A DNA stretch of 63,657 nucleotides, filler included, from Octopus bimaculoides (taxonomy: Eukaryota): assembly GCF_001194135.2 (NCBI RefSeq). It is 7 parts of 7 records of this genome, joined end to end, with 100 filler letters (N's around TTAATTAATTAA, not from the genome) between each part and the next. Parts side by side here need not be neighbours in the genome. Positions count along the whole stretch, not along the records: positions 60,740 to 63,657 come from NC_069003.1; 6 more parts are not named here. One strand, given 5' to 3'. The translations under genes were made by a program, and so were the position numbers. Below the pieces are notes generated by a model, which searched no databases, was not told where the DNA came from, and saw only the letters and a list, made by a program, of their open reading frames with translations. How positions within the stretch are numbered: the stretch's first letter is position 1; each line of letters starts with the position of its first letter. Below, piece by piece: positions 60,393 through 63,657 of the stretch.

Positions 60393-60782
60393 TTCCAGAA
60401 AAATCATAATAAATGAATAAAAAACCTGTTGATCAATACGGTTGGAATGTATTATGATCGAACAGCAACAAGAACAACAAAACAACAACAACAACAATAA
60501 TAGCAACAATAACAACAAAGAAATACAAGAAAAGATTTGACAGACAGTGCAACAGATACTTTACGGATAAAAAAATTAAAAAAAACGAAACAAATAAAAC
60601 AGAGGATGTATTCGAAAACAAATAGATCAGAGAACAAAGNNNNNNNNNNNNNNNNNNNNNNNNNNNNNNNNNNNNNNNNNNNNTTAATTAATTAANNNNN
60701 NNNNNNNNNNNNNNNNNNNNNNNNNNNNNNNNNNNNNNNTATGTATGATTGTAATTGGTTGGTTGCATATTTGTTCGTTTGT

Positions 60783-60926
60783 CTACTTGTCTGTTTGTCT
60801 CCTATGTACTAGAAAACCAGTCGACCAATTATGCTCAAACTTGGTATGTTCCTTAAACCTAGGATTAGGTTTTGCACAAACTTGAATCCTGTCCATGACC
60901 ATGGGGTCAAATTTTTGGCCTCCAGG

Positions 60927-60927
<1 letters not shown>
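60783..60927 (-). mobile_element. Non-autonomous repeat fragment, possibly Helentron/DINE-like
   Basis: Minus strand CCAAGTTTGAGCATAATTGGTCGACTGGTTTTC...GACAAACAGACAAGTAGACAAAC. Same architecture as 2490-2690. Confidence 0.3.
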
Positions 60928-60999
<72 letters not shown>

Positions 61000-61133
61000 G
61001 CAAGCAGGCAGGCAGGCAGGCAGGCAGACGGACAAGCAGAAAGACAGAGACATGTGGACGGATGGACGGATGGATGGGTGGATGGGTGTGCGGATGAGAG
61101 AGTAGGTGGATGGACAGAGAGACAGACAGACAC

Positions 61134-61198
<65 letters not shown>

Positions 61199-61728
61199 GG
61201 TACCTGTGATATTGGAGGGTGAGCATGGTGAATAATCATGGAACGAGAGTAGGCGAAGAGAGATTATTTCTGTCAGAGAAGTGCGCGTTTGCTGATTGGT
61301 TAATTTTGGCCATACGTTGGCGGAATTAATTGTAGGAGATGTTGTATGTTAGGCTATGTATGTTTGTATGGAACTGGACGTATAAGAATGGAAATTATGT
61401 GAGAGAGGCTGACGGCAGTGGTATCGATTCAGGCATTCATCACAGAATGCTGTAATTGTATGCCAATGTGGTGCTGTCACCATAAAATGGTGTGATATCG
61501 ATATAGTAAGGTGAAGGGGATAATGACTTAACAGCAAAATGGAATGTCGATTGTATTAATGTTGGAAGGGAGCAAAAACATTTTTTAAGTATAACCAAGT
61601 TTTATTTTGTGCTTTGTTAATTATCGTTCTTAATTATATCATTACCACTGTTGCTGAGAGGTTAGTTTTGAAGAACTACCAAACAGCTTTCACGTCAGAC
61701 TTTAAATATGACGATCGTACTTTTTAAA

Positions 61729-62496
61729 CCCTTTTGATACCAAACCGCCCGAGACTGCCTTTGTTTCTGTGATACAAACTTCCTGTTGTAAAGTAATTTA
61801 AATTAGAACCTTCCATCAAAATTTCATGTTACTTTATGTTTCAAACACCAGCTTAATAATTACAAAGTTATTTCACTAAATTCCTCATTAATTTCAAAAT
61901 TAAGTGAAACAAAGCCTGCGTGCTCCGTAACTGACCTGAGATCGCCCCGAGTTCTATGATAAAATCTTGCTGTTTTAAAGTGATATCGATTTAAAATTTC
62001 TTCCATGAAAATTTCATGTTAATTTATGTCTCAAACATAAGCTTAATAATAAAATTGTAAAGCGAGCAGCCACACCAAAGTGGCAGATAAATATTACTAC
62101 TAGTTTAACCCCAGGTGGATTCTCCACCAGCTGGTTTTCAGAGTAGCTACCCGCTTTATTGTTTAGTATACGTTACTACTCTATCTCTTCTTAAGATTTT
62201 ATAAATAACAAAATTATTTTACTAAATTCACTATTTTCAAAAGTAATTGAAAGAAAGCTAGTGTTGTATGACTATAACCTGACACTTACCCCTGGTGCGA
62301 TACATATATACAAATATACAAACTTTCTGTTTTAAAGTGATATAAATTAAAGCCTATCAAAATTTCATATTGTGTTCCAAACGACAACTTAATAATGACA
62401 ATTCTATTTTATGAATTTTACTAAATTCTTCATTATCTTCAAACTTATTTGGAACAAAAACAGTGTATCTCAGAAGAAATATGGTAAAAAAAAGGG
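61729..62496 (+). mobile_element. piggyBac-type MITE with tandemly amplified ~200-250-bp interior
   Basis: Termini CCCTTTTGATACC / GGTAAAAAAAAGGG, flanked by TTTAAA and TTAA. Interior unit (AAAATTTCATGTTAATTTATG...CTTAATAAT...ACTAAATTC) occurs three times, plus a fourth partial copy at 62501-62640. Confidence 0.7.
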
Positions 62497-62872
62497 TTAA
62501 GTTTATCTAAATTAAAACCTATCACAATTTCATGTTAATTTGCTAATCTCATGTTAATAATGACGAAATTATTTAACTAAATTCTTAATTATTATCAATA
62601 CTCATAGAAACAAAAAGAAATTTGAATTTCAACAAAAGTATGGAAACGAAAGAGTTTAAAATGTCTCGATGCTTTTTTTCTGTCTCTGTCTATGTGAGTG
62701 TGTGTGTGCGTATACGTGTGTGTGTGTCTCTGTCTCTCTCTTCCCTCTCTCTCTTTCCCTCTCCCTCTCTCTCCCTCTCTCTCTCTCTCTCTCTTCTTTG
62801 TTCTCTTCCTTTTTATTATTTAATTTTGTTTTATTTTATATTTCTTTTTGACATGGTTGCCGTTTGGAGCAG

Positions 62873-63286
62873 GATGACAAAAGCACCTTGGACAAACCAC
62901 AAGATGTGCAACGCCGTTACAGCCTGGTACCACCAACGTCTGCCGTTCCAGGCATCAGCTTGACAACCGAAGACAACAGCTGCGGAACCAGTCCCGACTA
63001 CTCACGTCGACCAAGTGCCCATAGCTTGGGAACCTTTAATCTACCCGTAAGTGCTGCTTTTGATCGGTTAACCGGAGGCAGTTTGTATCGGCGCTCCAGC
63101 GCCCACAGCCTGGGGGTGCTGCCAATTGGCCTGAGCGGGCACACAGAGTGGGGTAGCAATTCCAGCCGACGTTCGAGCTCGCATAGTTTGGGTATGTACT
63201 CCCTGAGCTATTTCGGTGAAGATGGCTGGAGTAGACAAAGTTCTCGGAGGACAAGCGCCCATAGTCTTGGACCGGTGATCATGCCC
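62873..63286 (+). CDS. Internal coding exon (phase 0-0, 138 aa) with four RRxS(A/S)HSLG modules; protein unidentified
   Basis: Long polypyrimidine tract, GAGCAG| acceptor, CCC|GTAAGT donor at 63287, open frame. The motif amino acids are conserved while their codons are synonymously diverged. Confidence 0.8.
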
Positions 63287-63657
63287 GTAAGTTCATACAG
63301 AAATAATAGTCCAATGTGAAACAAAAAAAACACCCCTGCTGTGATTACTGTGATCTCTGGATGTTGTCAATATCGGCACCCACCCGTGCGACTACCCGCC
63401 CACCACCCTTTTTCTCTTGACTTATACACGTTTGCCCTCTCAGCTCCACGCCAAATCAATCAAAAGACAGACATACCACAAAGTTTAATCGTAGTTTGCA
63501 TACACATACATGCACATACGCATACACACACTTAGAGAAACCTGCAGACATATTATATATATGCATATATATATATATATACTCACGTACACACATGTAT
63601 GCACATGCTTGTATACAAATATATATATGCATGTATGTATGTATGTACATATATATA

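What the first reader, a model, noticed from the sequence alone, without database searches (positions are those of the whole stretch)
62873..63286. Unrecognised protein segment with four evenly spaced S-R-R-x-S-(A/S)-H-S-L-G phospho-modules
Seen: SRRPSAHSLG, YRRSSAHSLG, SRRSSSHSLG and SRRTSAHSLG at spacings of 28, 26 and 26 aa, plus RRYS. Codons differ synonymously (e.g. CGT CGA / CGG CGC / CGA CGT / CGG AGG) while residues are kept, indicating protein-level selection. Established: RRxS is the PKA consensus, pS-x-x-S primes CK1, and S-x-x-x-pS primes GSK3. This triple arrangement drives multisite switches in Ci/Gli, and PKA-primed CK1 clusters occur in Drosophila Smoothened. Inference: a disordered multisite cAMP-controlled switch or degron in a protein I cannot name; the invariant HSLG may be a docking motif.
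Basis: partly seen in the sequence, partly recalled or inferred. Interest (0 to 1): 0.8.

Follow-up and report, generated by a model that had tools for sequence, protein, structure and literature searches.

The report
Spliced phospho-motif array in octopus pseudokinase
The segment is a real, strongly conserved exon in the disordered tail of the octopus SCYL2-like pseudokinase (the fly gene is "black match"), and a second conserved splice site inside it probably lets the protein carry one or four copies of a kinase-target motif.

Summary
Window 62873-63286 is one internal exon of 138 codons from Octopus bimaculoides chromosome CM046623.1. It holds four [SY]RRxS[AS]HSLG modules spaced 28, 26 and 26 aa apart, plus RRYS.

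The protein can now be named. The exon is in NCBI model LOC106871153, which is a fragment. The full-length Octopus vulgaris orthologue and about 200 protostome relatives are SCY1-like pseudokinases: a dead kinase domain, HEAT repeats and a tail ending in MQLFSGK. NCBI calls them "SCY1-like protein 2", or "SCY1-like protein bma" in some arthropods.

Against a second cephalopod, synonymous sites are saturated (pS 0.77) while pN is 0.10. The module consensus across Lophotrochozoa is [DE][RK][PS]-RRPSTHS[LV]G.

New here: a GTAAGT inside the exon (63047) is kept in two cephalopods, a mussel and a gastropod. It is used as the splice donor in the O. vulgaris, Mytilus, Mercenaria and Dreissena models. 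Modules 2-4 therefore form an in-frame optional cassette of 80 aa.

A basic-residue-directed kinase site with a primed CK1 site fits the sequence. AlphaFold2 gives pLDDT 48, which fits a disordered tail.

Interest is moderate.

The parts
62727..62872 (+). Pyrimidine-rich end of the intron ((TC)n, then T-rich) and the 3' splice acceptor ...ggagcag| with AG at 62871-62872
   Evidence: Sequence; TRF rows 62727-62794 and 62816-62848; acceptor context. The same ...cag|GA(T/C)GA(A/C)AA junction is present in the second cephalopod, Mytilus and Gigantopelta.
62873..63046 (+). Part of the exon shared by the long and short gene models: 58 codons, DDKSTLDKPQDVQRRYSLVPP...SRRPSAHSLGTFNLP
   Evidence: Translation. 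98% identical to aa 668-726 of the full-length O. vulgaris SCY1-like protein P0039, whose model ends the exon here. pN/pS 0.105.
62912..62923 (+). RRYS site inside the conserved RR[YH]SL[VI]PP block
   Evidence: R14, S17, L18, P20 and P21 are invariant in the 12-sequence tail alignment.
63002..63031 (+). Module 1, SRRPSAHSLG (present in both the long and the short models)
63047..63052 (+). Internal alternative 5' splice donor GTAAGT; in the long form it is read as Val-Ser
   Evidence: O. vulgaris model P0039 joins ...TFNLP directly to EMERRGS. The same GTAAGT follows module 1 in L003, Mytilus L002:79775 and Gigantopelta L005:82593. V59 and S60 are at least 90% conserved.
63047..63286 (+). Optional in-frame cassette, 240 nt = 80 aa, carrying modules 2-4
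   Evidence: Included in O. bimaculoides model P0001. The homologous 82 aa are present in Mytilus edulis isoform X1 and absent from X3. pN/pS 0.16.
63086..63115 (+). Module 2, YRRSSAHSLG
63164..63193 (+). Module 3, SRRSSSHSLG
63242..63271 (+). Module 4, SRRTSAHSLG, followed by GPVIMP (GP[LV]VVP in most relatives)
63287..63292 (+). Distal 5' splice donor GTAAGT. Its 9-mer CCC|GTAAGT is identical to that of the internal donor
   Evidence: P0001 continues with EMERRGS..., encoded about 43.7 kb downstream (L001:62924).

Best explanation
The segment is an internal coding exon of the Octopus bimaculoides orthologue of the protostome SCYL2-like pseudokinase. NCBI names this family "SCY1-like protein 2", or "SCY1-like protein bma" in some arthropods. 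The Drosophila gene black match (bma) was named from a nociception screen.

The exon encodes part of the disordered C-terminal tail that follows the dead kinase domain and the HEAT repeats. The tail is built from repeats of one short linear motif, R-R-x-S-x-x-S-[LV]-G. Its lophotrochozoan consensus is [DE][RK][PS]RRPSTHS[LV]G followed by hydrophobic-hydrophobic-Pro. Variants of the motif recur up to the C-terminus (ERRGSRGSI..., QRRSSFQSIG, MQLFSGK).

Two equally strong, in-frame GTAAGT donors lie 240 nt apart. Choosing between them gives a tail with one module (short form) or four (long form).

Inferred mechanism, not shown: a basic-residue-directed kinase (PKA, PKG, AGC or CaMK class) phosphorylates the first serine. 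That primes CK1 on the serine at +3. The number of phosphorylated modules, set by splicing, then grades or sharpens how the tail binds a partner or changes the protein's trafficking role.

Shown: exon identity, protein family, purifying selection, motif conservation, low AlphaFold2 confidence consistent with disorder, conservation of both donors, and gene models that use each donor. Inferred: that both splice forms occur in octopus itself, that phosphorylation happens at all, which kinases act, and the consequence.
For: The piece is 100% identical over 2918 nt to O. bimaculoides CM046623.1, and the exon is in NCBI model LOC106871153.

A phmmer search of 1.8 billion representatives finds the tail only at the C-terminus of Pkinase-plus-HEAT/Arm proteins. 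Named relatives are SCY1-like protein 2 or bma across molluscs, nemerteans, a brachiopod, annelids and arthropods. The source of the name bma is bioRxiv 10.1101/053413. PMC13637896 gives SCYL2 as its human orthologue.

Full-length O. vulgaris P0039 is 98% identical over the shared part of the exon. It carries HRN and GLG where active kinases have HRD and DFG; the Asn is invariant in 16 aligned members.

Selection: pS 0.77, pN 0.10, modules pN/pS 0.064. Similarity to the second cephalopod stops within 5 nt of the exon ends.

Motif counts from 90 distinct modules are.

Splicing: the internal GTAAGT is present in 4 of 4 lineages examined, and the cassettes are 240, 240, 246 and 225 nt, all in frame. 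Mytilus X1 and X3 differ by exactly the cassette. Short-form models exist for O. vulgaris, Mytilus, Mercenaria and Dreissena. Long-form models exist for O. bimaculoides, M. edulis X1, Ruditapes, Gigantopelta, Babylonia and Biomphalaria.

AlphaFold2 gives pLDDT 48, pTM 0.12 and no secondary structure.
Against: No phosphorylation data for any member were seen. I inspected no RNA-seq reads, so use of both donors in octopus rests on two gene models from two species plus conservation.

The O. bimaculoides kinase and HEAT exons are not in the DNA I could fetch: none lie within 18.8 kb upstream. Linkage in this species is therefore inferred from O. vulgaris.

Thr, Ala or Ser at +1 and Pro at -1 are not the optimal PKA context (general knowledge). 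The near-invariance of H/Q at +2, [LV] at +4 and G at +5 could reflect a binding motif that needs no phosphate.

The AlphaFold2 alignment was shallow (12 rows), so low confidence is weak evidence for disorder.

I did not resolve whether the family is the strict orthologue of vertebrate SCYL2/CVAK104 or a protostome paralogue.
Confidence: 0.62

Rival explanations
1. One reading: a cAMP/PKA-CK1-GSK3 triple-kinase switch or phosphodegron of the Ci/Gli or Smoothened type.
For: RRxS with S at +3 is conserved. Three of the four octopus modules also have S at -4, which is GSK3 spacing from S0. The tail gives low AlphaFold2 confidence, consistent with disorder, and the modules are multivalent.
Against: S at -4 occurs in only 25/90 modules family-wide; Pro is commonest there. 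Position +6 is P, I, V or E in the six commonest residues listed, so there is no CK1 run. The modules do not contain DSGxxS. R/K at -5 in 49/90 modules fits Akt, RSK or S6K as well as PKA. Nothing here links the protein to cAMP or to regulated degradation.
Confidence: 0.12
2. Multivalent 14-3-3 clamp: the phosphorylated RRxpS modules, about 26 aa apart, bind 14-3-3 dimers at two sites each. Splicing sets how many dimers can bind. This is one specific downstream reading of the best explanation.
For: The sites are basic-residue-directed and repeated at 26-28 aa in a flexible tail. That spacing can span a 14-3-3 dimer (general knowledge).
Against: The defining Pro at +2 of mode I and II motifs is absent; +2 is H (57/90) or Q (25/90). 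No binding data exist.
Confidence: 0.2
3. Phosphorylation-independent repeat: the roughly 26-aa unit (RRPSTHS[LV]G, then hydrophobic-hydrophobic-Pro, then xxFGE) is a peptide ligand repeated to increase avidity. Its target could be the protein's own HEAT domain or a coat or trafficking partner. The serines would be contact residues.
For: Conservation extends well beyond the phosphoacceptors: H/Q at +2, [LV] at +4, G at +5 in 90/90, and ILPISMFGEGGE-type linkers nearly identical across gastropods and bivalves. Octopus units 2 and 3 align with each other over 26 aa.
Against: The invariant Arg-Arg at -3/-2 with an invariant Ser is the signature of a kinase site. Simpler RRxS sites persist in arthropod bma tails that lack the rest of the module. 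AlphaFold2 predicts no fold.
Confidence: 0.18
4. Not a real coding feature: a chance ORF or low-complexity repeat in an intron.
For: The surrounding piece is repeat-rich intron. The NCBI model for this locus is a fragment whose first exon looks doubtful.
Against: Splice sites are canonical. There are 138 aligned codons with pN/pS 0.13 against a cephalopod whose synonymous sites are saturated, and similarity ends at the exon borders. Orthologous exons occur in the same position of full-length proteins in several phyla.
Confidence: 0.01

Closest known systems
SCY1-like pseudokinase 2 (SCYL2/CVAK104) family; Drosophila black match (bma)
   Same: The orthologues have an N-terminal kinase-like domain lacking the catalytic Asp residues (HRN, GLG), HEAT/Arm repeats and a long low-complexity C-terminal tail. 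NCBI names them SCY1-like protein 2 or bma. A 2026 paper gives SCYL2 as the human orthologue of bma.
   Different: The RRPSTHS[LV]G array and the ...MQLFSGK end were found only in protostome members. The full array occurs only in lophotrochozoans; arthropod bma tails keep simpler RRxS sites. No deuterostome appeared among the 120 listed hits. I did not resolve strict orthology versus a protostome paralogue of SCYL2. The clathrin/AP2-binding tail described for vertebrate CVAK104 (general knowledge) was not compared.
PKA-primed CK1 phospho-clusters of Drosophila Smoothened and Ci/Gli
   Same: Repeated RRxS followed by Ser at +3 in a disordered C-terminal region. Several clusters per protein.
   Different: Each module has only one primed position and no further S at +6. 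The GSK3-spaced Ser is not conserved. There is no Slimb/beta-TrCP-type degron. The S[LV]G and hydrophobic-hydrophobic-Pro extension has no counterpart. The protein family is unrelated.
Kemptide-type PKA site (LRRASLG)
   Same: Arg-Arg, then Ser, then Leu-Gly. The tail's last motif, QRR[AS]SFQ[AS][LI]G, and the modules share RR..S..LG. This resemblance comes from general knowledge and is a lead only.
   Different: In the modules three residues (T-H-S) sit between the first Ser and Leu-Gly, so Leu-Gly follows the second, primed serine.
Alternative 5' splice-site exon extensions that change the number of linear motifs in a disordered region
   Same: Two in-frame donors in one exon. The extension adds three copies of a linear motif without touching folded domains.
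   Different: Both donors, and the exact GTAAGT hexamer, are kept across classes of molluscs whose synonymous sites are saturated. That is unusually deep conservation for a competing donor pair.

Membership tests
SCY1-like (SCYL2-like / bma) pseudokinase | The exon is homologous to the C-terminal tail of family members | tested here: met
   phmmer E-values from 1e-67 down to 1e-10 to tails attached to Pkinase-plus-HEAT proteins. 98% identity to O. vulgaris P0039 aa 668-726. Aligns to the same position in Mytilus, Gigantopelta, Babylonia and Biomphalaria.
SCY1-like (SCYL2-like / bma) pseudokinase | N-terminal kinase-like domain lacking catalytic residues | tested here: met
   Tested on orthologues only. 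Pkinase E-values run from 1e-15 to 1e-26. P0039 reads LHRNISPQS and AGLGF where HRDLKPxN and DFG would be; the Asn is invariant in 16 members. The O. bimaculoides exons for this domain are outside the DNA available.
SCY1-like (SCYL2-like / bma) pseudokinase | HEAT/armadillo repeats after the kinase-like domain | tested here: inconclusive
   All Pfam hits are below the gathering score: HEAT E=0.0085 (P0004), Arm E=1.6e-5 (P0023), HEAT_EF3_N E=1e-5 (Lingula). No structure was predicted for this region.
SCY1-like (SCYL2-like / bma) pseudokinase | Strict orthology to vertebrate SCYL2/CVAK104 (clathrin/AP2-binding tail) | not tested
   Rests on NCBI names and on PMC13637896. No vertebrate sequence was retrieved for a tree.
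PKA-CK1-GSK3 phospho-switch or degron (Ci/Gli, Smo type) | RRxS site directed by basic residues | tested here: met
   R at -3 in 90/90, R/K at -2 in 90/90, S0 in 90/90.
PKA-CK1-GSK3 phospho-switch or degron (Ci/Gli, Smo type) | CK1 site(s) primed at +3, continuing at +6 | tested here: inconclusive
   S at +3 in 82/90, but +6 is P, I, V or E in the six commonest residues listed, not S. One primed site fits; a run does not.
PKA-CK1-GSK3 phospho-switch or degron (Ci/Gli, Smo type) | GSK3 site four residues N-terminal to a primed Ser | tested here: not met
   S at -4 in 3 of 4 octopus modules but only 25/90 family-wide; Pro in 37/90.
PKA-CK1-GSK3 phospho-switch or degron (Ci/Gli, Smo type) | DSGxxS-like beta-TrCP/Slimb degron created by the phosphates | tested here: not met
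   The modules read S-[TA]-[HQ]-S-[LV]-G, with no D/pS-S-G-x-x-S arrangement.
PKA-CK1-GSK3 phospho-switch or degron (Ci/Gli, Smo type) | Actual phosphorylation and cAMP dependence | not testable with these tools
   No phosphoproteomic resource was available. None of the motif strings searched occurs in a relevant paper in the searchable library.
14-3-3 mode I/II binding motif | R-[S/x]-x-pS-x-P (Pro at +2) | tested here: not met
   +2 is H in 57/90 and Q in 25/90; Pro is not among the residues listed at +2. Non-canonical binding is not excluded.
Alternative 5' splice-site exon | Two in-frame consensus donors in one exon | tested here: met
   CCC|GTAAGT at 63047 and 63287, 240 nt apart. The same arrangement is in L003, Mytilus and Gigantopelta.
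Alternative 5' splice-site exon | Both products represented by transcripts or gene models | tested here: met
   Mytilus edulis X1 versus X3 within one species. O. bimaculoides long versus O. vulgaris short. Gene models only; I inspected no reads.

The most novel reading that the evidence does not exclude
Choice between the two donors is a deeply conserved (mollusc-wide) way to set the number of a family-specific phospho-motif, one or four copies, on the tail of the bma/SCYL2-like pseudokinase. The long, multiply phosphorylated form would act as a switch-like regulator of membrane-protein trafficking in excitable cells. That would link second-messenger kinases to the nociception and heart-rate phenotypes reported for fly bma.
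Probability: 0.15. Interest if true: 0.55.

Novelty: new variant of a known kind. Interest (0 to 1): 0.38.

Why it matters
SCYL pseudokinases matter for neuronal survival and trafficking. In humans SCYL2 is linked to arthrogryposis (PMC11988787). Fly bma came out of nociception and heart-rate screens. How their tails are regulated is largely unknown. This exon gives a concrete, testable handle on that. It carries a family-specific linear motif that is much more conserved than its surroundings, repeated at a fixed spacing. Its copy number appears to be switched by a donor pair kept across molluscan classes. It also corrects the annotation: LOC106871153 "uncharacterized protein" is the 3' fragment of the octopus SCYL2-like gene. 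The result is useful but not surprising in kind, because phospho-motif clusters in disordered tails and motif-changing splice variants are both common.

Tried and rejected
- Pfam on the 224-aa model gave no family. A PDB sequence search gave only a chance hit at E=0.5.
- Literature searches for HSLG, the motif strings, CG34356 and CG1951 found nothing on this tail. The published nociception paper (PMC5333372) is not held; I used its preprint, which does not give the CG number for bma.
- O. vulgaris P0039 is not in the contig index, and the Babylonia gene is too long to fetch.
- A Jukes-Cantor dS could not be computed because pS exceeds 0.75, so raw proportions are reported.
- Some phmmer hits matched only the doubtful first exon of the NCBI model or its low-complexity parts, not the modules. 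These were HYR-repeat and other repeat proteins (P0016, P0021, P0022, P0026).
- Rfam miRNA matches at 63543-63656 are far below gathering scores and lie on TA/CA repeats, so I treat them as chance.
- I considered and dropped these motifs because the sequences do not fit: calcineurin LxVP (PLVVP in relatives but PVIMP in octopus), gamma-ear or AP2-ear motifs in FGE[DG], the LATS HxRxxS motif, and the beta-TrCP degron.
- The first impression that the N-terminal hydrophobic stretch of P0001 marks a membrane protein was dropped. That exon has an inverted near-copy 1 kb away and no counterpart in O. vulgaris.

Full report
**1. What is at the coordinates**

The usable piece (60740-63657) is AT-rich eukaryotic DNA. 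It holds a compound (GATA)n/(GGCA)n microsatellite, degenerate 165-200-bp AT-rich repeats and a (TG)n(TC)n run. GC rises from about 0.25-0.3 to 0.52-0.58 only over 62840-63240.

That GC-rich stretch contains one long ORF. The ORF is bounded by ...ggagcag| (AG at 62871-62872) after a long pyrimidine tract, and by |gtaagt at 63287.

The four modules SRRPSAHSLG, YRRSSAHSLG, SRRSSSHSLG and SRRTSAHSLG start at aa 44, 72, 98 and 124, so the spacings are 28, 26 and 26. RRYS is at aa 14. Between modules, 8-9 of 10 residues match but only 2-4 of 10 third codon positions do.

None of 200,000 shuffles of the 138 residues reached four RRxSxxS. Only 10 had two or more HSLG, against four observed.

**2. Whose exon it is**

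The piece is 100% identical to Octopus bimaculoides chromosome CM046623.1. The exon is part of NCBI model LOC106871153, an "uncharacterized protein" of 224 aa spread over 61 kb. Pfam and PDB sequence searches on that model return nothing.

A full-sensitivity phmmer search of 1.84 billion representatives found 26 hits. The long ones (677-778 aa) carry the same tail at the C-terminus of proteins with a Pkinase domain and weak HEAT/Arm matches.

Searching with these proteins recovered named relatives. They are "SCY1-like protein 2" in bivalves, gastropods, a chiton, nemerteans and Lingula. A profile search added about 200 protostome members, including Drosophila, several of them named "SCY1-like protein bma".

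- bma stands for black match. It was named in a larval thermal-nociception RNAi screen for its hypersensitive phenotype (bioRxiv 10.1101/053413).
- A 2026 paper reports a heart-rate phenotype for bma and gives SCYL2 as its human orthologue (PMC13637896).

The Octopus vulgaris model P0039 (768 aa) is full length. It is 98% identical to the window exon over aa 668-726. Its kinase-like domain reads LHRNISPQS and AGLGF where active kinases have HRDLKPxN and DFG. The Asn is invariant in 16 aligned members. This is the pseudokinase signature of the SCY1-like family.

The O. bimaculoides model is therefore a 3' fragment:

- None of P0039 aa 1-667 maps within the 18.8 kb upstream that I could fetch.
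- The model's hydrophobic first exon has an inverted 47%-identical near-copy 1 kb away and matches only repeat proteins elsewhere.

I did not resolve whether this protostome family is the strict orthologue of vertebrate SCYL2/CVAK104 or a paralogue. No deuterostome appeared among the 120 listed hits.

**3. Selection**

A Logan contig from a second cephalopod of unknown species (L003) has the same 138 codons. Against it:

- pS = 0.77, which is saturated. A Jukes-Cantor correction fails.
- pN = 0.10, so pN/pS = 0.13 for the whole exon.
- By part, pN/pS is 0.105 for the first 58 codons, 0.16 for the last 80 and 0.064 for the four modules alone.
- Nucleotide similarity between the two contigs stops within 5 nt of the exon borders.

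**4. The motif**

I took 90 distinct modules from 27 lophotrochozoan proteins. The consensus is [DE]-[RK]-[PS]-R-R-P-S-T-H-S-[LV]-G-[PIV]-[FL].

| Position relative to first Ser | Residue counts (of 90) |
|---|---|
| -5 | R/K 49 |
| -4 | P 37, S 25 |
| -3 | R 90 |
| -2 | R/K 90 |
| 0 | S 90 |
| +2 | H 57, Q 25 |
| +3 | S 82 |
| +4 | L/V 84 |
| +5 | G 90 |
| +6 | P, I, V or E among the six commonest residues listed; S not among them |

The repeat unit is longer than ten residues. In gastropods and bivalves, units 2 and 3 read RRPSTHSVGILPISMFGEGGE and RRPSTHSLGVFPxxCFGE. Octopus units 2 and 3 align with each other over 26 aa, which explains the even spacing.

Weaker copies of the same theme continue to the C-terminus: ERRGSRGSI, QRRSSFQSIG, then MQLFSGK. 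One also sits upstream (RRNHSLLSLG). The RR[YH]SL[VI]PP site at the start of the exon is invariant.

Arthropod bma tails keep simpler sites (RRLSDN, RRHSSIGPQERRGS) but not the full module. Annelids, nemerteans and Lingula have one or two modules. The four-fold array is therefore a molluscan elaboration of an older RRxS-rich tail.

AlphaFold2 on a 12-row alignment of the tail gives pLDDT 48, pTM 0.12 and no secondary structure. That fits disorder, though the alignment is shallow. None of the motif strings searched turns up in a relevant paper in the searchable library.

**5. A second, internal splice donor**

The O. vulgaris model joins ...HSLGTFNLP directly to EMERRGS. That junction corresponds to a GTAAGT at window 63047, which the O. 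bimaculoides model reads through as Val-Ser.

- The two donors share the same 9-mer, CCC|GTAAGT.
- They lie 240 nt (80 codons) apart, in frame.
- Modules 2-4 sit between them.

The arrangement recurs in every lineage I could check:

| Lineage | Internal donor | Distal donor | Cassette |
|---|---|---|---|
| Second cephalopod (L003) | TTGCCC\|gtaagt | GTGCCC\|gtaagt | 240 nt |
| Mytilus edulis (L002) | TTTCCA\|gtaagt at 79775 | ACGCCC\|gtaagt at 80021 | 246 nt |
| Gigantopelta aegis (L005) | CTCTCA\|gtaagt at 82593 | GTTCCT\|gtaagt at 82818 | 225 nt |

With uniform codon choice, a Val-Ser pair is spelled GTAAGT 1 time in 24. Three further lineages with saturated synonymous sites all keeping it has a chance of about 7e-5. 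This is my rough estimate.

Within one species, Mytilus edulis isoforms X1 (886 aa) and X3 (804 aa) differ by exactly this 82-aa cassette. Across species, the gene models divide as follows:

- Short form: O. vulgaris, three Mytilus species, Mercenaria and Dreissena.
- Long form: O. bimaculoides, M. edulis X1, Ruditapes, Gigantopelta, Babylonia and Biomphalaria.

I inspected no reads, so use of both donors in octopus itself is inferred. In the nemertean Lineus, isoforms differ by a different tail cassette that also carries a KRRHSS site.

**6. Mechanism**

Shown:

- A conserved linear-motif array in the tail of a SCYL2-like pseudokinase, with low AlphaFold2 confidence consistent with disorder.
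- Both donors are conserved, and gene models exist that use each one.

Inferred:

- Donor choice gives one or four module copies in a single species such as octopus.
- The first Ser is phosphorylated by a basic-residue-directed kinase.
- That phosphate primes CK1 on the Ser at +3 (the pS-x-x-S rule, established knowledge).
- The number of phosphorylated modules tunes partner binding or the trafficking role of the protein.

The kinase cannot be named from sequence alone. RRxS fits PKA or PKG. RxRRxS, present in about half of the non-octopus modules, fits Akt, RSK, S6K or SGK. The hydrophobic residue at +4 fits the CaMK and AMPK classes.

A 14-3-3 reading is possible but lacks the Pro at +2. A phosphorylation-independent ligand repeat remains a serious rival, because conservation extends beyond the serines.

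**7. Verdict**

This is a real exon that can now be named. It is a lophotrochozoan variant of a known kind of feature, with a deeply conserved splice switch added. Interest is moderate.

Noticed in passing
window 60927-61198: Compound microsatellite in the intron: (GATA)n, then (GGCA)n, (GGAT)n-like and (GACA)n, then (GATA)n again, about 270 nt. It produces the long spurious minus-strand ORFs in the ORF list.
   Followed up: partly
window 61770-62620: Degenerate AT-rich direct repeats with spacings of about 156-357 nt (families D2-D5, 61-90% identity). This looks like a decayed tandem or satellite-like intronic repeat. I did not identify it.
   Followed up: no
window 62693-62850: (TG)n then (TC)n then a T-rich run lie directly upstream of the acceptor, giving an unusually long pyrimidine tract of about 150 nt before the exon.
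   Followed up: no
window 63047 and 63287: The two competing donors have the identical 9-mer CCC|GTAAGT in O. bimaculoides, and again in the second cephalopod (L003). Their intrinsic strength is therefore equal, and the choice would have to depend on other elements.
   Followed up: partly
window 63543-63656: Sub-threshold Rfam miRNA matches (mir-297, mir-466 and others; 26-39 bits against gathering scores of 76-101) on both strands of TA/CA low-complexity sequence. I treat them as chance.
   Followed up: yes
L001:10001-10132 and L001:10970-11071 (minus strand): The first exon of NCBI model LOC106871153 (MVVFT...DVLISS) has an inverted 47%-identical copy 1 kb away and matches only repeat proteins elsewhere. 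It is probably a spurious or repeat-derived 5' exon. The real kinase and HEAT exons lie more than 18.8 kb upstream of the window exon.
   Followed up: partly
P0044, P0047, P0048 (Lineus longissimus isoforms X3, X8, X10): These nemertean isoforms differ by a 54-62-aa tail cassette upstream of the modules. That cassette carries its own KRRHSS site. Splicing may therefore adjust the number of basic-residue-directed kinase sites in the tail in another phylum, using a different exon.
   Followed up: partly
P0004 and P0045 (Babylonia areolata): Two different "SCY1-like protein 2" proteins with the full module array come from one gastropod. They lie on different contigs, which suggests a lineage-specific duplication.
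   Followed up: no
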